A stretch of DNA of 63,800 nucleotides, counting the filler, from Octopus bimaculoides (Eukaryota), in the NCBI RefSeq assembly GCF_001194135.2. It is 5 parts of 5 records of this genome, joined end to end, with 100 filler letters (N's around TTAATTAATTAA, not from the genome) between each part and the next. Parts side by side here need not be neighbours in the genome. Positions count along the whole stretch, not along the records: positions 48,019 to 52,566 come from NC_068992.1; 4 more parts are not named here. One strand, given 5' to 3'. The position numbers were made by a program, and so were the translations under genes. Below, piece by piece: positions 17,424 through 53,222 of this stretch (positions within the stretch are counted from its first letter, which is position 1; each line of letters begins with the position of its first letter). The notes under the pieces are model-generated. The model was not told where the DNA came from. It worked only from the letters and a program-made list of their open reading frames with translations, and ran no database searches.

Positions 17424-18393
17424 TTACATATATACATACAAATACATATTTATATATGCTTATATGTGTGTGTATATATATATATATATCCATGCTAGCA
17501 TGGCAGGCAGAATGTTAAATGATGAAGATGATGATGATATATATCAGAGAAGCATTATGCTTTCGACCAAATATTATTCTTGGGAATGTTTTCTTGGTAA
17601 CTTGATCATAATGTCAATACTGGACTAGGAACACAATCTCTTTTAGACATGAGATCATTACATCATGACATATTTTGAAGGATGTGCTTGTACTATACGA
17701 AAGTAAGACCATGCTACTAAATGCCTATTGAACAAAAGATCAACAATGATGCTGATAAATCTCGCCAAAATTTGACCAAAAATATTAAACATGACACATA
17801 TCAGTGAAAAGTCATGTAATACACATAGGAAACACTGCTTTAAGATAAATAGATTAAAAATATTCTTGATGTTCAGAACAGCCATATTATTCCTACACAG
17901 TGAATGTTGGTGAAATATTTATGTCAAATTTCTGCCAAATCCATCCTGCCGCAACAGACCTAATATAGTTGTTGTGATCATAAAATGAAAACTTTCATTC
18001 TGTTGTGGAGATCCACGGCTTAGTTACCGTATCCCTTATTTTATCATTTGCTTGTCTCAGTCATTGGACTGCAGCCATGCTGTGGCACTGCCTTGAAGGG
18101 TTTGGTCGAACAAATCGACCTCCGCCCACTCCAGTACTTTTTTTTTTTTTTTTTTTAGTCAGGTACATATTGGTCTCTTTTGCTGAACCACTAAGTTGCA
18201 GGAACATAAACAAACCAACACCAGTTGTCAAGTATATATGTCTGTGTATATATGTGTGTGTGTGTGTGTGTGCATATATATATATGTGTGTAGGCTTACA
18301 AAGAATAAGTCCTGGGGTCGATTTGTTTGACTAAAGGCAGTGCTCCAGCATGGCCACAGTCAAATGATTGAAACAAATAAAAGAATAAAAGAC

Positions 18394-39143: not shown

Positions 39144-40670
39144 CACTCATGTTTATGGTAAAGATGAATCCTAAGTCAGCTCCCTCGTTGATACGGTGTA
39201 CCAGTGCTGATATCAGAATGGAGTTCGGACTGAAAAAGTGTGGGGTGTTAGTCTTGAAGAGAGGCAACGTCAAATGTGTGGACGAGCTAACGATACCGTC
39301 GGGGGAGGTTATGAAGCAAATAGAAGAGACGGTCTATAAGTATTTGGGGTTATTGGAAATGGATAAATTGATGGAGAAAGAAATGACAGAAAAATTTAAG
39401 GTGGAGTACTTGCGCAGTCTAAGACTGATCCTTAAGTCGAAATTAAACGGACGGAATAAGATTGAAGCTATCAACACTTGGGCGGTTTCACTCCTTAGAT
39501 ATGGAGCAGGGGTAATCGCATGGCCAGTAGACGAACTAAACAAATTAGACAGAAAGACAAGGAAGTTGCTGACTAGATATGGGGTACTCCACCCAAAAAG
39601 TGATACAGAGTGTATATACCAAGAAAAAGAGGGGAAGAGGACTGATTGGATGCGAACACAGCATTAAGGCAGAAAAAACAACATAGCATGGTAGGTAAAA
39701 AAAATGCCACAGAACCACTATTATTAGAAGTAAGAAGGTCAGACTTGTGTAGGATGGAAAATTGCTAAGATAAGCACTTGAGAAAGAATGGAACTGAAAA
39801 TAGGTGTATAAAGAAAGAATGCATGGACAATTTCATAAGGATGTCGGAGATAAGACAGACAGAGAAAAAGCTGGCTGTGGATGACTAAAAGTGATTTAAA
39901 ACCGGAAACGGAGGCTCTAATCTGTGCTGCCCAAAAGCAAGCATTAAGAACCAATTAGATTAAATACAGAATAGACAACACATCAGAAAGTGATAAGTGC
40001 AGAATTTGTGGACAAAATGGTGAAACTGAATGGCATATTACCAGTCAATGTACGCCACTTGCCCAGAAAGAATATGAGGCGTGATGACAATGTAGCAAGG
40101 ATTGTCTGTTGGACACTTTCCAACAAGTATGGACTTGACAGAGAAAAAGAGTGATACAAACATAAACCCGAAGGTGTAATCGAAAATGACAATGCAAATA
40201 TCCTGTGGGATTTTATGGTTCAGTGCGACCACGAGATAGAGAATAGGAAGCCAGACATAGTCTTAATTGAGAGAAATCAAACTAGGCTGGATCATAGATA
40301 TAACATGCCCAGCTGACAACAAGGTATGCAATAAAGAAGACAGAGAAGTCGATAGATATGACAGGTTAATCAGTTGTGGTCGATGAAAAAGGTAGTAGTA
40401 GTACCAATAATTGTCGGAGTCCTGGGAACAGTGAGTAAAAATCTTGAGAAGTACATGGAACAAATAGGGGCTGCAATAATGGTGGAGCACTTGCAGAGAA
40501 CAGCACCGCTTGGAACCGCTCGAATACTCCGGAAGGTGCTCGAAAAATAAGAGGTGTTACCTTAGTTCACTGGTAGTGAACAGCTGACACCGTAGTACAT
40601 CTCCAGCGTTAGAAGCTGGAGATATACTACTACTACTACTATATTAATGATGATGATAATAATAATAATA
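39144..40670 (+). mobile_element. 5'-truncated Dong/R4-clade non-LTR retrotransposon (RT C-terminus plus restriction-like endonuclease), decayed
   Basis: MEFGLKKC, YKYLGLLE, SKLNGRNKIEAINTWAV, CRICGQNGET..HI...C, KPDIVL, VVPIIVGVLG, GTARILRKVLE; (ACT)/(AAT)n tail. Confidence 0.9.
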
Positions 40671-47918: not shown

Positions 47919-48094
47919 NNNNNNNNNNNNNNNNNNNNNNNNNNNNNNNNNNNNNNNNNNNNTTAATTAATTAANNNNNNNNNNNNNNNNNNNNNNNNNN
48001 NNNNNNNNNNNNNNNNNNATATATATATATATGTATGTATATACATAATCTTTGTTGCTTTCTCGTATACAAGCAGAACCATTACTTGAAAGAA

Positions 48095-48544
48095 TCATTG
48101 AAACGAATCAATGATGATGCAACGTGAGGCCCTCGTATATCTTGAGCCAGGCGAAAGTTTTGCACATTCTATTACATAATGCACAGCTGCGCTGGGTGCC
48201 GCAGTATGAACTATTTTGACATACCTTTTCAATCGTCCAACTGAGAGGTGCACCTTTCCGCATGTTACACATGCTCTGTTGTGAACAATAGCCATATCAC
48301 AATTTACCATTGGTTGATTCCTCTGAGTTCTCTGATGGCTGACCAGCTCCTCATGACTCAAGCACCTCCTCTCAAAAACTACACACACTAAAAGCAACAC
48401 TTCCTCATTCTCCGCAGATCTATTCCTTCTAAGCCTTCTATTCTTCTTGTGCTTCATTCTCTCTCCCTCAAATCTCGAACAACAACTGTGCACTCTCTTC
48501 CTCCAATCCATCTCGGTCTTATGCCCCCTTCTCCCAATCAACAA
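48095..48544 (-). mobile_element. RTE-like LINE 3' fragment with degenerate C2H2 zinc fingers
   Basis: DWRKRVHSCCSRFEGER...RRLRR followed by CxxxxRxCxSxxxLxSHQR and CVTCGKVHLSVGRLKRYVKIVH. Confidence 0.6.
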
Positions 48545-48668
48545 CTGAAATTCCTATCTGTGTCAGAGCAATTCTGAGGCAGTCATTGAATCTCATTTTG
48601 AGTTTATGTGCTGGTTTCTTACCATATTCCTGCTCACCATATATAATGTACTGTTCCATGATAGAAAT

Positions 48669-49397
48669 AAATAAAATCATTTGCAAGGCGAAGTTCTCAT
48701 CAGCAGATACGCCAAAACATTAACATATTAATTAGAGACGAAATAACACGTGTCTCATCCTTATATATTATAATTTTTTCAAATCCTCCTCGTAAGCGCA
48801 GATTCAATCGGCAGCAAATAAAAATTCCGATTAAACTTCAGAAATTGCTAAAATCATTTCTTAAAATTAATATAGGGAAGGAAAAAAATTATAGAAATTT
48901 TTTCTACCAGTGGCCTAGTATGTATACAAAGTCAATAGACATATTTTTCATATAAAAATTAGTGTACACAAAGAGGCGAGCCTTAAGCAGGTTGTCTAAC
49001 ATACTAGAAAGAACAGTCAAAAAGTCCAAACCACAGTTTAAGAGCAATTTCGAAGGGAATGAAAAATAAAAAAAAAGAAAGAAAAAAAACATTCACAATG
49101 CGCGGAGGATTTGAAAAATTATAATGTATAAGGATGAGACACGAGTTATTTAGTCTCTAGTTTATATGTTAATGTTTTGGTGTATCCGCTGATAAGAACT
49201 TTGCCTTACAAATTATTTTATTTGCTAATTTAAGTTCGAAACCTGAGTTCCGGGTGTAAAACATGGTAAATGTTTTTAGTTTTCGTTCCCTTCGAAATTG
49301 CTCTTAATCTGTGGTTTGGACTTTTTGACTGGTCTTTCTAGTATGTTAAGCAACCTGCTTAAGGCTCGCCTCTTTGTGTTTAAATGTACACTAATTT
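48669..49397. repeat. Two interleaved inverted repeats (A, B, A', B')
   Basis: 48669-48789 is the reverse complement of 49104-49223; 48956-49065 is the reverse complement of 49278-49397. Confidence 0.85.
49181..49258 (+). ncRNA. Type I hammerhead-ribozyme-like motif (two deviations from consensus)
   Basis: Stem I TGTATCCG/CGGGTGTA, core CTGATAA, stem II GAACTT/AAGTTC, GAAA, stem III AC-ctga-GT(T), cleavage-site C at 49250. Folded by eye. Confidence 0.55.
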
Positions 49398-50040
49398 ACT
49401 ACAGCTTAGATAACTGCTCACAATAGTGTTCCTTGGAGCTAAGTAGTCAGACCTTCCGAGCTCAAGTGTCTCTCTTTCTCTTGTCGGTTACATAGTATCC
49501 ACTACCATACACTCTCCACTAGCCGCTATCCAAGCTTGCTTCTCCCATAACGTCATAATCCTTTCACTGCTCATACTTTTCCCACAACGGTAGACTTGCA
49601 CTTGTTCAAAAGAAAAGTTAAACATGTTGATCTCACCGAAGAATGCGGCTATAATTCCTTCCTCCAAGCAATCCCTCATCAAAAGTAAAGTAAAGTTAAT
49701 TTGCTGTGTATCTTCGCTGTCGTATTGTGTTTAAGTTACGTTTTAATATAAAGTTTAATATGGAGTCAGGGTACCATTAAGTCTACAGTTTAGTACATAC
49801 TTTAGAGTTTAGTACTGAGTTAAATACACGTTTTAGGAGAGAGAATTAAGTTATAGGTCGATGTAGAACGTATTAGTTCTTTCAGGTTGAATCTCTGGAG
49901 CACTGGAAATAAAATTATCATTTTCATTATTGTTAATTTTCGTATAAAATTTTAATTGGTGAACCAAGTTGGGCAACTAATTAATATTTCAAATGTACAA
50001 TATTTCAGAATCTTTTTGCTATTTCACAGCAAAATATTTA

Positions 50041-50046
50041 TTTATT
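50041..50046 (-). terminator. Candidate polyadenylation signal AATAAA of the 701-aa ORF
   Basis: tttatt on the + strand, about 50 nt downstream of the TGA; the hexamer is common in AT-rich DNA. Confidence 0.4.
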
Positions 50047-50096
50047 GGCCTGAAAAAACTTAAAAACATAACCCTGCGAATCCATCTCGAAGAATC

Positions 50097-52202
50097 TCAT
50101 ATTTCGAAAGAAGAATTTTCAAAATCGTATGGTATGTCTATTACGTTGTCTGGAGAGTTAAAAGCAACTCGGCGAATTGATTTATCACTCGAGAACGAGT
50201 TGCGTGCTGCAGGTATATACTCATCGGCAACTGGAGACCTAAAAGTAACTCGGTGAATTGGATTATCAGTCGAGAACGAGTTGTGTGCTGCAGGTATATA
50301 CTCATCGATAACTGGAGACCTAAAAGTAACTCGGCGAATTGGATTATCAGTCGAGAACGGGTTGAATGCGTCAGATGCATCCTCATCGATAACTGGAGAC
50401 ATAAAAGTAACTTGGCGAATTGGATTAACAGGCGAGATCGAGTAGTCTGCCTCAGGTGCAGCCTTACCGGTAGCCGACATCGAGTAGCATGTTTCAGGTG
50501 TAGGATCCACATTAATATTCGACATCGAATGGTATGTCTCAGGTGTAGCATCCTCATCAAGAGTCGACATCGAGCAGTATGTCTCGGATGTATCCTCATC
50601 AAGTGTCGAGATCGAGTAGAATGATTCAGATGTATCATCATCGCCAATAATATCATCATCACCAATAATAACATCATCGCCAATAACATCATTATCACCA
50701 ATAATATCATCATCGCCAATAATAGGAGTAGGTTGACTTGACGTTGAAGGGCTGCTTACATGGAAAAGTGATTCAGGAGATGTATATTCCTCGGCAATCG
50801 AATAAAGAAATGATTTCTCGCCTGGCAAGGTTTCCCGGTCTGCCATTCTATTGAAATAGGCTTCTTGGGCTGGATGAAACGGTGTACTCTGCCACATTGC
50901 ACCGCTTATTGTAGGATCTTGACTTACCAAAATTGGTCCTTCAGATGACGGGACTATGTCAATATCGTACTCAGGTTTTTGGTTCGATTTGTAATGTGGA
51001 TTATAAAACATATCATAAATTAGATATGCACCACGATTTTGAAACCTATTTAAGTCATCATTGATTGATAAAACATTTCTTTCGCCACCTTTGATTGATT
51101 TCTTCTTATTCGTGACATCGTCTGCTTCATTCAATTTTCCATGTTGAAATTTGTTATTTTCATAAACATCCTTATTGTCTGTTTCTTTATGCGTACCATA
51201 TTTCTCCGTGTCTACGTCTGAGGAATCTTCGTTTAACTGGTCGTTGTTTTGACTTCCGTTCACGTCAACAGTACCACAGCCTTCAGTGTTTCCATGATCA
51301 ATGCTTTGAGAATATTTATCATCATCATTATTTCCTGTACTTTCCACATCATCACTGCTATCCTCTTCAATATTTTCATGATCAATGCTTTGAGAATATA
51401 TATTATCATCATTATTTCCTGCACTTTTCACATTATTAGCACCACCCCCTTTAATACTCTTATGATCACTGCTTTGAGAATATATATCGTCATTATAATC
51501 ACCTGTAGTGTTCACACTATCAGTACCACCCCCTTTATTATTCTTATGATCCCTGCTTTGAGAATATATATCATCATTATAACCTCCTGTACTTTTCACA
51601 TTATTAGCACCACCCCCTTTATTATTCTTATGATCCCTGCTTTGAGAATATATATCATCATTATAACCTCCTGTACTTTTCACATTATCAGCACCACCCC
51701 CTTTATTATTCTTATGATCCCTGCTTTGAGAATATATATCATTATAACCTACTGTACTTTTCACGTCATCAGTACCATTCCCTTCAACATTCTCACAATC
51801 ACTGCTTTGTGAATATGTATCGTCATTATAACTGCCTGTAGTTTTCACATCCTCAGTAACGTCCTCTTCAATAGTTCCATCATCACTATCGTGAGAGTAT
51901 ATATCGTCATTAGAACCTACTGTAGTTTTCACATCATTAGTACTCTCCTCTTCGATATTCTCGTGATCATTGGTTTGAGAATATATATCGTCATTATAAC
52001 CTCCTGTAGTTTTCACAGTACCATTCTCTGCACTATTTTCATATTCACTATCTTCAGAATAAACATCGTCTTCATTATCTCCTGTAGTTTTGTCATCTTC
52101 CTCATTTGCTTCGTCTCGATCTTGTGACTGGTCGGCCATTTGTTTACGCTGGGAGCAGAGGCGTTCATAAGACGAAACACTTTCATTCTCTGTGGAATCC
52201 AT
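50097..52202 (-). CDS. Uncharacterised acidic, repeat-built 701-aa protein (probably single-exon), candidate phosphatase-docking scaffold
   Basis: 2.1 kb stop-free frame in an AT-rich genome. All internal repeat periods and indels are multiples of 3 (84, 18, 42-45, 81 nt). In-frame stop 8 codons upstream of the ATG; AATAAA at 50046-50041. No recognisable folded domain, signal peptide or TM segment. Confidence 0.8.
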   Translation of the reverse strand: MDSTENESVSSYERLCSQRKQMADQSQDRDEANEEDDKTTGDNEDDVYSEDSEYENSAENGTVKTTGGYNDDIYSQTNDHENIEEESTNDVKTTVGSNDDIYSHDSDDGTIEEDVTEDVKTTGSYNDDTYSQSSDCENVEGNGTDDVKSTVGYNDIYSQSRDHKNNKGGGADNVKSTGGYNDDIYSQSRDHKNNKGGGANNVKSTGGYNDDIYSQSRDHKNNKGGGTDSVNTTGDYNDDIYSQSSDHKSIKGGGANNVKSAGNNDDNIYSQSIDHENIEEDSSDDVESTGNNDDDKYSQSIDHGNTEGCGTVDVNGSQNNDQLNEDSSDVDTEKYGTHKETDNKDVYENNKFQHGKLNEADDVTNKKKSIKGGERNVLSINDDLNRFQNRGAYLIYDMFYNPHYKSNQKPEYDIDIVPSSEGPILVSQDPTISGAMWQSTPFHPAQEAYFNRMADRETLPGEKSFLYSIAEEYTSPESLFHVSSPSTSSQPTPIIGDDDIIGDNDVIGDDVIIGDDDIIGDDDTSESFYSISTLDEDTSETYCSMSTLDEDATPETYHSMSNINVDPTPETCYSMSATGKAAPEADYSISPVNPIRQVTFMSPVIDEDASDAFNPFSTDNPIRRVTFRSPVIDEYIPAAHNSFSTDNPIHRVTFRSPVADEYIPAARNSFSSDKSIRRVAFNSPDNVIDIPYDFENSSFEI
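50140..50440 (-). repeat. Coding tandem array, ~4 x 81 bp (27 aa), each unit carrying an RVxF motif
   Basis: gagaac recurs at 50191, 50272 and 50353 (period 81); motifs RQVTF, RRVTF, HRVTF, RRVAF. Confidence 0.92.
50634..50723 (-). repeat. Coding tandem array, 5 x 18 bp (IIGDDD hexapeptide)
   Basis: IIGDDD IIGDND VIGDDV IIGDDD IIGDDD in the translation. Confidence 0.9.
51258..52089 (-). repeat. Coding tandem array, 10 x ~84 bp (28 aa, consensus STGGYNDDIYSQSRDHKNxxGGGxxxVK)
   Basis: ccctgc recurs at 51551 and 51635 (period 84); the units are visible in the translation. Confidence 0.92.
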
Positions 52203-52254
52203 GCCGGTCACCTCAAATAATTCTCAATGGACAGAAATTGTTTTACTTTCAACT

Positions 52255-52268
52255 GTGACGTCACCAAT
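52255..52268. promoter_or_regulatory. Palindromic CRE (GTGACGTCAC) overlapping a CCAAT box, about 55 bp upstream of the ATG of the 701-aa ORF
   Basis: TGACGTCA at 52256-52263; CCAAT at 52264-52268 (+ strand). Function is inferred from position only. Confidence 0.45.
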
Positions 52269-52308
52269 GGAATGTAACAGAAATTCTGGATTCTAGCAGC
52301 AGCAACAG

Positions 52309-52357
<49 letters not shown>

Positions 52358-53222
52358 GTCATCATCATCATCATCATCATCATCAACAGCAGCAGCAGCG
52401 GCGGCGGCGGCGGCGGCGACAGCATCAATGGTGCTGCTGTCGCCATATTACTATTGCCGTTAATACGAATATTACGTTGAACCTATAGCGGCTACTGGAG
52501 GAATGCGTCAAGAGTTAAATCACAGGGACAAACAACAAAACTATGCTTGCATACACACACACACACNNNNNNNNNNNNNNNNNNNNNNNNNNNNNNNNNN
52601 NNNNNNNNNNTTAATTAATTAANNNNNNNNNNNNNNNNNNNNNNNNNNNNNNNNNNNNNNNNNNNNATATATATATATACACACACACACTTATATACAT
52701 ATATACATATATATATAGGCGAGAATAAAATGGAGGACAAATGACAAACAGAAGTGTGTCTTTTGTGCTAGTAAGCCATTACTTCTCAGTCTCACCTTTA
52801 TTTGCTAATTAAATAATAGCTTACTAGTGCAAAAGACACACCTGGTTGTTATTTCTCCTCCATTTTCTTATCGCCTATATAAATTAAACTACGGTTACCC
52901 ACTATATTACCTGCTGCTGTATACCTTTTACCAAGGAATATACCTACTGAGGTAATTACCAGTAGTGCCTGTGGATATATCTATCGTTTAGAGGCTTTAA
53001 ACACCTCTAACTTATACCTACTCTTTTACTTGTTTCAGTCATTTGACTGCGACCATGCTGGAGCACCGCCTTTAGTCGAGCAAATCGACCCCAGGACTTA
53101 TTCTTTGTAGGCCTAGTACTTATTCTATCGGTCTCTTTTTGCCGAATTGCTAATTGACGGGAACATAAACACACCAGCATTAGTTGTCAAGCAATCCTAG
53201 GGGGACAAACACAGACACACAA

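What the first reader, a model, noticed from the sequence alone, without database searches (positions are those of the whole stretch)
50041..52268. Self-contained 701-aa acidic repeat gene combining PP1-type, PP2A-B56-type and Tyr motifs: candidate multivalent phosphatase scaffold
Seen: a 2.1 kb stop-free ORF made of four different in-frame repeat arrays, no folded domain, signal peptide or TM segment, CRE+CCAAT 55-65 bp upstream and AATAAA 50 bp downstream. From N to C it carries 10 DDIYSQ-type units, a short unique core with LYSIAEE, and four RVxF units. Known: RVxF docks PP1, LxxIxE docks PP2A-B56, and the two co-occur in disordered mitotic scaffolds such as Repo-Man/CDCA2. Inference: a lineage-specific disordered protein that recruits several phosphatase copies. 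I do not recognise it as a described family.
Basis: partly seen in the sequence, partly recalled or inferred. Interest (0 to 1): 0.82.

Follow-up and report, generated by a model that had tools for sequence, protein, structure and literature searches.

The report
Fast-evolving octopus acidic repeat gene
This is a real, intron-free gene for a very acidic, mostly unstructured repeat protein from an undescribed, rapidly evolving gene family so far found only in octopuses; its phosphatase-docking motifs look like species-specific by-products of repeat expansion, not conserved features.

Summary
A 701-codon ORF lies on the minus strand (ATG 52202, stop 50097-50099). It has four in-frame tandem arrays, ten DDIYSQ-type units, one LYSIAEE, four RVxF units, a CRE at -61 and AATAAA 50 nt after the stop.

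The gene is real. A syntenic orthologue (Logan contigs L001/L002) keeps 467 codons open at about 22% neutral divergence (simulated P about 2-4e-5). Weak but specific relatives exist as "hypothetical proteins" in Octopus vulgaris, O. sinensis and Argonauta hians. In Octopus they form at least 5 tandem single-ORF paralogues.

The best-conserved part is the proximal promoter, with a palindromic TGACGTCA block (82-93% identity). The protein evolves near-neutrally (dN/dS 0.99 in the unique parts). Only an N-terminal peptide and a roughly 35-aa core motif are shared.

- LYSIAEE is LYPIVDQ in the orthologue, and one such match is expected by chance (P about 0.21).
- The RVxF unit exists in the orthologue only as one dead copy behind a stop codon, and is absent from all paralogues.

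PP1 binding stays biochemically plausible but has no evolutionary support. Verdict: an ordinary taxon-restricted disordered repeat-protein gene, of modest interest.

The parts
52309..52418 (.). Trinucleotide microsatellites, (CAT)~26 then (GCG)7 on the + strand, immediately upstream of the promoter block
   Evidence: TRF. A trinucleotide microsatellite sits at the same place in L001 and upstream of one O. vulgaris paralogue.
52245..52269 (-). Conserved proximal promoter block CATTGGTGACGTCACAGTTGAAAGT. It holds the palindromic CRE TGACGTCA (52256-52263, -61) and ATTGG (inverted CCAAT, 52264-52268).
   Evidence: The 30-nt window from 8 nt upstream of the CRE (52242-52271), which contains this block, is 29/30 identical to L001 and 25-27/29 to the four O. 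sinensis paralogues. The flanks of the palindrome change symmetrically (GTGACGTCAC vs ATGACGTCAT). The CCAAT itself is not kept in Octopus (ATTGA).
52203..52229 (-). Conserved block just before the start codon: CATTGAG..TTTGAGGTGACCGGC-ATG. It includes the in-frame upstream stop TGA (52224-52226).
   Evidence: 28/30 identical to L001 and 22-24/30 to the O. sinensis paralogues.
50097..52202 (-). Single-exon coding sequence: 701 codons plus stop. pI 4.1, 21% D+E.
   Evidence: The orthologous ORF is P0001/L001.
52074..52202 (-). N-terminal peptide shared by the family: MDSTENESVSSYERLCSQRKQMADQSQ...
   Evidence: tblastn to the O. vulgaris and O. sinensis paralogues: 44% over 52 aa, E 3e-4, and 36% over 123 aa, E 8e-5.
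51258..52097 (-). 28-aa acidic array: 10 units of [DN]VK[ST]TGGYNDDIYSQS.DH... Units 6 and 7 are 98% identical at the DNA level.
   Evidence: Eight units in the orthologue. Absent from the Octopus and Argonauta relatives. AF2 models beta-hairpins with pLDDT 60-79 in 1 of 5 models, but only 37 when the array is modelled alone.
50721..51257 (-). Unique core, aa 316-494
   Evidence: 57% identical to the orthologue. dN/dS 0.95-0.98. pLDDT below 50.
50991..51095 (-). Family-defining core motif IKGGERNVLSINDDLNRFQNRGAYLIYDMFYNPHY. It contains an FxNPxY match.
   Evidence: This is the most conserved stretch against the orthologue, 13 of 15 identical. It is shared with Argonauta hians P0004 and a second A. 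hians ORF, and in degenerate form with Octopus P0003/P0005.
50787..50807 (-). LYSIAEE, the only LxxIxE-type match
   Evidence: It reads LYPIVDQ in the orthologue. Chance P about 0.21.
50631..50720 (-). 6-aa array (IGDDDI) x5
   Evidence: Absent from the orthologue.
50454..50630 (-). 15-aa array (S/T-E-T-Y-x-S-M-S-T-L-D-E-D) x about 4
   Evidence: The orthologue has about one unit (ADESQYFAADEDASWSY*).
50100..50453 (-). 27-aa array x about 4 carrying the RVxF units: RQVTF 50403-50417, RRVTF 50322-50336, HRVTF 50241-50255, RRVAF 50160-50174
   Evidence: The orthologue has a single disabled copy after its stop codon.
50037..50046 (-). Poly(A) signal AATAAATAAA, 50 nt after the stop
   Evidence: Kept in L001 (AAATAAA).
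49551..50058 (-). 3' flank conserved with the orthologous locus. It includes a block at 49877-49927 that also matches two places in the O. sinensis cluster.
   Evidence: 79.5% identity over 512 nt to L001. 88% over 51 nt to L005 46318-46368.

Best explanation
This is a genuine, intron-free, protein-coding gene of an octopod-restricted, tandemly duplicating, very fast-evolving family of acidic, intrinsically disordered repeat proteins.

Shown:
- The reading frame is kept open by selection.
- A 25-nt promoter block with a perfect palindromic CRE, the start-codon context, a roughly 40-aa N-terminal peptide and a roughly 35-aa core motif (IKGG..DLNRFQN.GAYLIYD.FYNP) are the only parts shared across the family.
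- The rest of the protein changes at the neutral rate.
- Each lineage or paralogue has grown its own internal tandem arrays.

Inferred:
- Transcription is driven by a CREB/ATF-type bZIP dimer on the invariant CRE of a TATA-less promoter.
- The product is a cytosolic or nuclear polyanion. Its length, charge and disorder matter more than its exact sequence.
- Its sequence-specific contacts are made by the N-terminal peptide and the core motif.
- The arrays arise by replication slippage or unequal crossing-over. This multiplies whatever short motif a unit happens to carry, here an acidic Tyr unit x10 and an RRVTF unit x4.
- The PP1/B56-type motifs are therefore most likely incidental, recent and dispensable. 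They are not the gene's conserved function.
For: A real gene:
- The 222 non-repeat codons were stop-free in 0 of 5000 shuffles.
- The orthologue P0001 (L001/L002, two independent assemblies, identical sequence) keeps 467 codons open. About 10 stops are expected at 22% divergence, P about 2-4e-5, and the core indels are multiples of 3.
- Synteny with L001 holds on both sides.

Family:
- A profile search of 1.84 billion representatives finds only O. vulgaris P0003 and A. hians P0004 beyond the orthologue.
- All are named hypothetical or uncharacterized.
- O. sinensis has at least 5 tandem paralogues, each one long ORF of 432-1388 aa.
- A LITAF-like neighbour is present in both Octopus and Argonauta.

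Promoter conservation exceeds protein conservation:
- Promoter 64/69 identical to L001 and 56-58/68 to the O. sinensis paralogues.
- By comparison, about 75% CDS identity to L001, and 26-31% protein identity to the Octopus and Argonauta proteins.

Near-neutral protein evolution:
- dN/dS 0.99 (bootstrap CI 0.64-1.65) in the unique parts and 0.82 in the array.
- dS about 0.24-0.26 in those unique parts, about equal to the flank divergence.
- 0.66-1.05 among the O. sinensis paralogues.

Disorder and no known fold:
- No Pfam match and no PDB sequence match.
- AF2 mean pLDDT 45 for the full protein and 37 for the array alone.
- Best Foldseek E-value 0.3.
- Every segment lies on the disordered side of the charge-hydropathy boundary.

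Lineage-specific arrays:
- The three C-terminal arrays (678 bp) correspond to 186 bp in the orthologue.
- Units 6 and 7 are 98% identical.

Motifs not conserved.
Against: - No transcription or protein evidence could be obtained here.
- dN/dS about 1 is also what a non-functional sequence would show. Only the open frame and the conserved promoter argue otherwise.
- Orthology rests on one other, unidentified species.
- The window's own species is unknown, and the piece is too short to test linkage to the LITAF-like cluster.
- The RefSeq model of the O. sinensis relative has spliced isoforms spanning 30-40 kb, so 'single exon' is not proven for the family.
- One AF2 model gives the 28-aa array a beta-hairpin repeat at pLDDT 60-79, so a conditionally folded array is not excluded.
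- The RRVTF units are good matches to the strict PP1 consensus (chance 0.3% per unit), so a lineage-specific PP1 function cannot be dismissed.
- The role of the CRE and the binding role of the core motif are inferences.
Confidence: 0.62

Rival explanations
1. One reading: a multivalent phosphatase scaffold. The four RVxF units dock several PP1 catalytic subunits, LYSIAEE docks PP2A-B56, and the acidic Tyr units are phospho-regulated, as in Repo-Man-type scaffolds.
For: - Three of the four units match the strict Meiselbach RVxF pattern, with chance 0.3% per shuffled unit.
- RRVTF combines a basophilic-kinase (R-R-x-T) site at the x position with the dock, followed by an S-P. This is the regulatory logic described for KNL1 and Repo-Man (PMC6363451).
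- The region is predicted disordered, hence accessible.
- The protein has no signal peptide, so it would meet cytosolic phosphatases.
Against: - The orthologue has only one dead copy of the unit, behind TAG, TAG and a +1 frameshift, identical in two assemblies.
- No paralogue in O. sinensis, O. vulgaris or A. hians has a strict (Meiselbach-type) RVxF or an acidic-Tyr array. The only loose ELM-pattern matches are KLRW and KIKF, at non-homologous positions.
- LYSIAEE reads LYPIVDQ in the orthologue while GEKSFLY before it is kept. A single match is expected by chance at P about 0.21.
- No SILK motif.
- No match to any Pfam family at E up to 10, so none to a Repo-Man/Ki-67 PP1-binding-domain model if Pfam holds one.
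- The valency comes from one tandem amplification.
Confidence: 0.1
2. It is not a functional gene. It is a neutrally drifting minisatellite-rich stretch or a dying gene copy whose frame is open only because repeat units without stops were amplified.
For: - dN/dS is indistinguishable from 1.
- CDS identity to the orthologue (about 75%) is lower than that of the 3' flank (79.5%).
- Other frames and the antisense strand also hold 120-190-aa ORFs inside the arrays.
- The protein is absent from the protein collection.
Against: - The 222 non-repeat codons are open, against 0 of 5000 shuffles.
- The orthologue's 467 codons are open, at P about 2-4e-5 under neutrality.
- Core indels are multiples of 3.
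- The promoter block, start context and poly(A) signal are conserved.
- At least 5 Octopus paralogues also keep 432-1388-codon frames at dN/dS 0.66-1.05.
Confidence: 0.08
3. The 28-aa array is a folded beta-hairpin or beta-solenoid repeat domain, possibly cation-dependent given its D/N/G-rich turns. In that case the protein is structural or ion-binding rather than a motif carrier.
For: - AF2 places two strands per unit across aa 47-303, with pLDDT 60-79 in the best full-length model.
- The same strand pattern recurs in the array-only run.
- The Foldseek hit list consists mostly of beta-helix, RTX and antifreeze folds.
- V, I, Y and I/V positions recur in each unit and in the orthologue.
Against: - Only 1 of 5 models reaches that confidence; the other four average 35-39.
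- The array alone gives pLDDT 37.
- The best Foldseek E-value is 0.3, with TM at most 0.17.
- GRAVY is -1.49 with 23% D+E, on the disordered side.
- dN/dS is 0.82 in the array.
- The array is absent from the Octopus and Argonauta relatives.
Confidence: 0.08
4. The ORF is an internal or terminal exon of a larger, possibly secreted, protein, and the 'promoter' is intronic.
For: - A weak polypyrimidine-AG lies just upstream of the ATG.
- The RefSeq model of the O. sinensis relative joins exons over 30-40 kb.
- A conserved polypyrimidine-AG block lies 170-220 nt downstream of the stop.
Against: - An in-frame TGA lies 8 codons before the ATG, and is also present in L001.
- The ATG and its context are invariant across all family members, each preceded by the CRE block.
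- Each paralogue is one uninterrupted ORF starting at that ATG.
- The O. sinensis 'second exon' lies right behind a fifth copy of the promoter block, so that model probably joins paralogues.
Confidence: 0.04

Closest known systems
Uncharacterized octopod proteins: O. sinensis LOC118763368 (XP_036358764.1), O. vulgaris CAI9723197.1 and CAI9723198.1, Argonauta hians Ahia01_000150100 (GAB1598729.1)
   Same: These are true homologues. They share the CRE promoter block and start context (the Octopus copies), the N-terminal peptide M..TE..Y..LCS..KMAD.SQ, and the core motif (IKGG..L.RFQ..AY.IY..FYNP / FYIPK). Each is one long ORF, acidic, with no Pfam domain, internal tandem repeats and dN/dS 0.66-1.05.
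   Different: Only 25-31% protein identity. None has the DDIYSQ array, the IGDDDI array or the RVxF units. They carry other repeats instead, such as 50-aa SRSQQYSQLGDLKLT... units and about 113-aa units in a 1388-aa ORF. Whether the window gene sits in the same LITAF-linked cluster is unknown.
Repo-Man/CDCA2, Ki-67, KNL1 (disordered PP1 and PP2A-B56 scaffolds)
   Same: They also have an RV[ST]F dock preceded by basic residues in a disordered region, with a phosphorylatable x position. Repo-Man also carries an LxxIxE (PMC6363451).
   Different: There is no sequence homology (no Pfam hit at E up to 10). The motifs are not conserved in the orthologue or paralogues. There are four identical-by-descent docks instead of one dock with extended PP1 contacts. 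No SILK or KiR-type extension is present.
Taxonomically restricted, rapidly evolving acidic repeat IDPs in general, for example the acidic tandem-repeat disordered region of GCNA/ACRC (named from my own knowledge, not tested here)
   Same: Acidic, repeat-rich and disordered. Repeat number and sequence change quickly between species while the frame is maintained.
   Different: There is no homology. GCNA has a conserved SprT-type protease domain in most species, whereas here nothing but two short motifs is conserved.
Beta-solenoid / RTX-type repeat proteins
   Same: Short G/D/N-rich repeats that AF2 models as stacked beta-hairpins. The Foldseek list is dominated by beta-helices.
   Different: No significant structural match (E at least 0.3). 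The model confidence is low and unstable. The period is 28 aa rather than 9 or 18-22 aa. The protein is cytosolic-type and eukaryotic.

Membership tests
Octopod LOC118763368-like family (undescribed; defined here) | Proximal promoter block CATTGRTGACGTCAYAGTTGAAAG and ..TTGAGGTGACCRGM-ATG | tested here: met
   Alignment A6. The window is 56-58/68 identical to the four O. sinensis paralogues, with 25-27/29 in a 30-nt window around the CRE. The block is degenerate in A. hians.
Octopod LOC118763368-like family (undescribed; defined here) | N-terminal peptide M-x-[ST]-TE ... Y-E-x-LCS ... K-MAD-x-SQ | tested here: met
   tblastn of window aa 1-51 against L004 18569-18724: 44% identity, E 3e-4. Window aa 1-121 against L005 1435-1749: E 8e-5.
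Octopod LOC118763368-like family (undescribed; defined here) | Core motif IKGG..(D)L.RFQ..AY.IY..[FH]Y[NI]P..PE[YF] | tested here: met
   HMM hits P0003 E 2e-5 and P0004 E 8e-5 against 1.84 billion proteins. tblastn E 9e-9 to 3e-8. Alignment A2.
Octopod LOC118763368-like family (undescribed; defined here) | Location in a tandem cluster beside a zf-LITAF-like gene | not testable with these tools
   This is seen in L003, L004 and L005. The window piece has only 355 nt upstream of the gene, and no eukaryotic genome search is available.
RVxF-type PP1-interacting proteins | RVxF consensus in an accessible, disordered segment | tested here: met
   RQVTF, RRVTF and HRVTF match [HKR][ACHKMNQRSTV]V[CHKNQRST][FW]. 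RRVAF matches only the looser ELM pattern. pLDDT is below 50.
RVxF-type PP1-interacting proteins | Motif conserved in orthologues | tested here: not met
   The orthologue reads DEDASWSY*QLITDKSA*, then a +1 frameshift, then SRVTFRSM*. That is one disabled copy. No strict (Meiselbach-type) RVxF occurs in 7 other family ORFs. The only loose ELM-pattern matches are KLRW and KIKF at non-homologous positions.
RVxF-type PP1-interacting proteins | Auxiliary PP1 motifs (SILK, phi-phi) and physical binding to PP1 | tested here: inconclusive
   No SILK motif. V-I lies 4-5 residues after the F, closer than my recollection of the usual phi-phi spacing. Binding cannot be tested in silico.
PP2A-B56 LxxIxE interactors | LxxIxE match beyond chance and conserved | tested here: not met
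   There is one match, LYSIAE at aa 466. At least one match occurs in 21% of shuffles of the unique part. The orthologue has LYPIVD-Q with conserved flanks.
Repo-Man/CDCA2 - Ki-67 family | Sequence homology to the PP1-binding domain | tested here: not met
   The Pfam scan at E up to 10 returns only a spurious UL74A hit. The PDB profile search returns nothing at E up to 10.
Secreted acidic matrix / biomineralisation proteins | N-terminal signal peptide | tested here: not met
   The N-terminal 30 aa have mean hydropathy -1.67. The maximum 19-residue hydropathy anywhere is 0.53. No dedicated signal-peptide predictor was available.
Beta-solenoid repeat proteins | Confident repeat fold with a structural match | tested here: not met
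   pLDDT 60-79 in 1 of 5 models only, and 37 for the array alone. The best Foldseek E-value is 0.3.

The most novel reading that the evidence does not exclude
The case: the window's lineage shows a multivalent PP1-docking array being born within an octopod-only, CRE-driven family of neutrally evolving acidic disordered proteins. Tandem amplification of a single C-terminal RRVTF-SP unit, which is dead in the sister species, would have created a four-site, kinase-gated PP1 sponge or scaffold. Amplification of a DDIY unit would have created a ten-site tyrosine-kinase substrate. More broadly, the family would be an example of genes whose regulation (an invariant palindromic CRE) is under far stronger constraint than their product.
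Probability: 0.1. Interest if true: 0.6.

Novelty: new member of a known kind. Interest (0 to 1): 0.3.

Why it matters
If the main reading is right, this is one more taxon-restricted, repeat-expanding disordered-protein gene. That is useful for octopod genome annotation. The window protein itself is not in the protein collection searched here, and its relatives are only 'hypothetical'.

It is also a warning about motif-based inference. Short docking motifs inside tandem repeats multiply by descent, so counting them overstates the evidence.

Two points are mildly interesting. First, the CRE-containing promoter is much better conserved than the protein across the family. Second, different paralogues and lineages have each expanded different internal repeats. 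That makes the family a possible model for how multivalent motif arrays arise.

It does not open a long-standing question.

Tried and rejected
- Homologue searches. The full-length search and the six-sequence profile search in the word-indexed 5.8-billion collection returned only the orthologue. Low-complexity words filled the 8000-candidate limit, so the third search was wasted. The 5-sequence core profile recovered only P0001 and P0004.
- Identifying the species of the Logan runs from the literature failed. SRR11869394 gave no paper, and the prefix hit was an unrelated plant study.
- Searches for LOC118763368 and for general octopus orphan-gene literature found nothing relevant.
- Pfam on the window protein, the orthologue, the Octopus and Argonauta relatives and three flank ORFs gave nothing credible. 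A CCDC85 hit (E 1e-5) in the 771-aa O. sinensis paralogue has no single passing stretch. It stems from repeated LTRSQWEAIVRRLR units, so I rejected it as repeat-inflated.
- The PDB sequence profile found nothing, Foldseek found nothing significant, and Rfam found nothing.
- I considered that the Octopus C-terminal tail KSTDPAVLKTFKRIN is homologous to the window unit STDNPIRRVTFRSP. I rejected this because 1536 of 5000 shuffles reach the same alignment score.
- I considered a folded beta-repeat domain. It was not upheld.


Full report
**1. What is there**

The piece (48019-52566) holds one long ORF on the minus strand. It runs 50097..52211 from a GTG, or 701 codons from the first ATG at 52202, with an in-frame TGA 8 codons upstream of that ATG.

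Tandem Repeats Finder confirms four separate in-frame arrays:
- 84 bp x9.1 (51259-52017)
- 18 bp x5.1 (50633-50724)
- 45 bp x3.7 (50475-50639)
- 81 bp x3.6 (50150-50443)

The product has pI 4.1, 21% D+E and GRAVY -1.10. It has no hydrophobic segment: the maximum 19-residue hydropathy is 0.53, and the N-terminus is strongly hydrophilic.

- ten DDIYSQ-type units, 26-28 aa apart
- LYSIAEE at aa 466-472
- RQVTF, RRVTF, HRVTF and RRVAF, 27 aa apart

TGACGTCA lies at -61 (52256-52263) and is abutted by ATTGG. AATAAATAAA lies 50 nt after the stop. Pfam finds nothing. One caveat applies: the 4 RVxF and 10 Tyr units are copies by descent, not independent events.

**2. Is it a real gene?**

A search of 5.8 billion proteins found one clear relative, P0001 (467 aa, 48% identity). 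It is encoded on short Logan contigs from at least two runs, L001 and L002.

L001 is the same locus in another, unidentified genome.
- The upstream microsatellite, the CRE block and the start context are all present.
- The poly(A) signal is present, and 512 nt of 3' flank (window 49551-50058) align at 79.5% identity.
- The CDS aligns at about 75%.

Nei-Gojobori estimates for the unique N-terminus plus core give dS 0.24, dN 0.24 and omega 0.99 (bootstrap CI 0.64-1.65). The 28-aa array gives omega 0.82. Amino-acid change is therefore about as fast as silent change and flank change.

The frame is nevertheless maintained.
- The 222 non-repeat codons were never stop-free in 5000 shuffles.
- Mutating the shared 467 codons to the observed divergence creates about 10 stops, so P(stop-free) is about 2-4e-5.
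- The core indels are 21 and 3 nt.

Selection thus preserves an open, acidic frame but hardly its exact sequence.

**3. A family, and what is conserved in it**

A profile of the core region, run against 1.84 billion representative proteins, gave two weak but specific hits besides the orthologue:
- P0003 (E 2e-5), Octopus vulgaris CAI9723197.1
- P0004 (E 8e-5), Argonauta hians GAB1598729.1, "hypothetical protein"

A fourth hit, a bacterial surface-repeat protein, is spurious.

Fetching their loci shows tandem paralogues.
- A. hians has two ORFs 1.7 kb apart.
- O. vulgaris has two within 8.5 kb.
- O. sinensis has at least five within 45 kb: 432, 597, 771 and 643 aa, plus a copy with a 1388-aa ORF made of about 113-aa repeats.
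- A zf-LITAF-like gene lies upstream in both Octopus and Argonauta.

The O. sinensis gene is RefSeq LOC118763368, "uncharacterized".

Three things are shared with the window gene:
- the N-terminal peptide: MDSTENESVSSYERLCSQRKQMADQSQ versus MNTTETYVFSKCYENLCSETEKMADHSQ
- a core motif, IKGGERNVLSINDDLNRFQNRGAYLIYDMFYNPHY. This is the best-conserved stretch against the orthologue, 13 of 15 residues
- the proximal promoter, which is the best conserved of the three

The promoter reads CATTGGTGACGTCACAGTTGAAAGT in the window and CATTGATGACGTCATAGTTGAAAGT in O. sinensis. Both also have ...CATTGAG..TTTGAGGTGACCRGM-ATG.
- Promoter identity is 64/69 to L001 and 56-58/68 to the O. sinensis paralogues.
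- Protein identity to the Octopus and Argonauta proteins is only 25-31%.
- The 10-bp palindrome changes symmetrically, GTGACGTCAC to ATGACGTCAT.

The O. sinensis paralogues also evolve at omega 0.66-1.05. No Pfam or PDB relative exists for any member.

**4. Structure**

AlphaFold2 with the six-sequence alignment gives mean pLDDT 45. The N-terminus, the core and all three C-terminal arrays fall below 50.

The 28-aa array is drawn as two strands per unit at pLDDT 60-79, but only in one of five models. Modelled alone, the array drops to pLDDT 37. Foldseek finds nothing better than E = 0.3.

All segments lie on the disordered side of the charge-hydropathy boundary. "No folded domain" is therefore the better-supported reading. 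A conditionally folded beta-repeat is a minor rival.

**5. The phosphatase-scaffold hypothesis**

The background facts are correct: RVxF docks PP1, LxxIxE docks B56, both occur in Repo-Man, and phosphorylation of the x residue blocks PP1 (PMC6363451). The RRVTF-R-S-P units are good matches. Three of the four fit the strict consensus, which a shuffled unit does 0.3% of the time.

(a) LYSIAEE is LYPIVDQ in the orthologue, while the preceding GEKSFLY is identical. A single LxxIxE-type match arises in 21% of shuffles of the unique region.

(b) The three C-terminal arrays (678 bp) correspond to 186 bp in the orthologue.
- There, the frame ends at ...DEDASWSY*.
- The sequence homologous to the 27-aa unit follows in the same register, but it carries TAG, a second TAG and a +1 frameshift before ..SRVTFRSM*.
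- This is identical in the two independent assemblies.

(c) None of seven other family ORFs has a strict (Meiselbach-type) RVxF or an acidic-Tyr array at a homologous place. The looser ELM pattern gives only KLRW and KIKF matches elsewhere.

Which state is ancestral cannot be settled with two species. Either way, the RVxF module is dispensable for the family, and its fourfold valency is one amplification event. The middle 81-bp units are 90% identical, and 84-bp units 6 and 7 are 98% identical. PP1 binding in this one lineage remains possible but untested.

**6. Best explanation**

It is a real, single-ORF gene of an octopod-restricted, tandemly duplicating family of acidic disordered proteins.

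The following are inferences. The invariant CRE points to control by a CREB/ATF-type factor. The protein's charge, length and disorder, together with two short conserved motifs, carry whatever function it has. The internal arrays come and go by slippage or unequal crossing-over, and they multiply incidental short motifs as they do so.

Expression, localisation and partners are unknown.

**7. Novelty and score**

Homologues are already in databases as hypothetical proteins. The family is undescribed, but it is of a familiar kind: taxon-restricted, fast-evolving, repeat-rich disordered proteins. The contrast between conserved promoter and neutral protein, and the repeated independent array expansions, are modestly interesting. 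Interest is 0.3. The scaffold-birth reading has probability about 0.1.

Noticed in passing
window 52309-52418; L001 1-30; L004 about 18290-18360: A trinucleotide microsatellite sits directly upstream of the CRE promoter block in the window ((CAT)~26 + (GCG)7), in the orthologue ((GAC)n(GAT)n) and upstream of one O. vulgaris paralogue ((TAC)n). Its position is conserved but its repeat motif is not.
   Followed up: partly
window 49877-50004; L005 46318-46368 and 17634-17725; L001 about 1780-1865: A downstream non-coding block..ATGAAAATGATAATTTT.TT.CCAGTGCTCCAG..ATTCAACCTGAAAGAA.., is 88% identical over 51 nt to a site 1.3 kb downstream of the fifth O. sinensis paralogue, and more weakly to another site in the cluster, in the same orientation. 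It resembles a polypyrimidine-AG acceptor followed by a short ORF (NDNF..S.P.IQPE). It could be an exon, a regulatory element or a mobile-element fragment; this is unresolved.
   Followed up: partly
window 48669-49379: Two interleaved, not nested, inverted-repeat pairs: 48669-48778/49114-49223 (110 nt, 90%) and 48966-49072/49273-49379 (107 nt, 94%). They look like a rearranged foldback or MITE-like insertion. Similarity to the orthologous contig stops at 49551.
   Followed up: partly
window about 50060-50096 (minus strand, just after the stop codon): Reading on in frame past the stop gives ...SSFEI*DSSRWIRRVMFLSFF. This is another RVxF-like string (IRRVMF) in the 3' UTR, possibly a decayed further unit.
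   Followed up: no
window 50991-51008 (aa 399-404): The conserved core motif ends in FYNPHY (FYNPQY in the orthologue), a literal FxNPxY (PTB-domain / endocytic type) match. It is not kept in Octopus (FYIPK) or Argonauta (HYNPHS, FHIPKF).
   Followed up: partly
L005 40505-45027 (O. sinensis CM016863.1): A fifth family copy has a promoter block at 40554-40669 and a truncated N-terminal peptide (only TTE...MAD.SQ kept, the middle stretch missing) in a 148-aa ORF. A different frame then carries a 1388-aa ORF of about ten 113-aa repeats, each holding a core-like LNRVWD.AFYRQY..RPEMP motif. The RefSeq LOC118763368 isoforms (484 and 526 aa) splice from upstream paralogues into this copy over 30-40 kb, which looks like a model joining paralogues.
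   Followed up: partly
L005 21740-24052 (minus strand): The 771-aa O. sinensis paralogue gives a Pfam CCDC85 hit (E 1e-5, 25.8 bits) with no single passing stretch. It comes from repeated LTRSQWEAIVRRLR units. The same faint label is attached to the O. vulgaris counterpart. It is probably repeat-inflated.
   Followed up: partly
window 48095-48544 (minus strand): A 149-aa ORF with Cys/His-rich stretches has no Pfam match. It lies beyond the region conserved with L001.
   Followed up: partly
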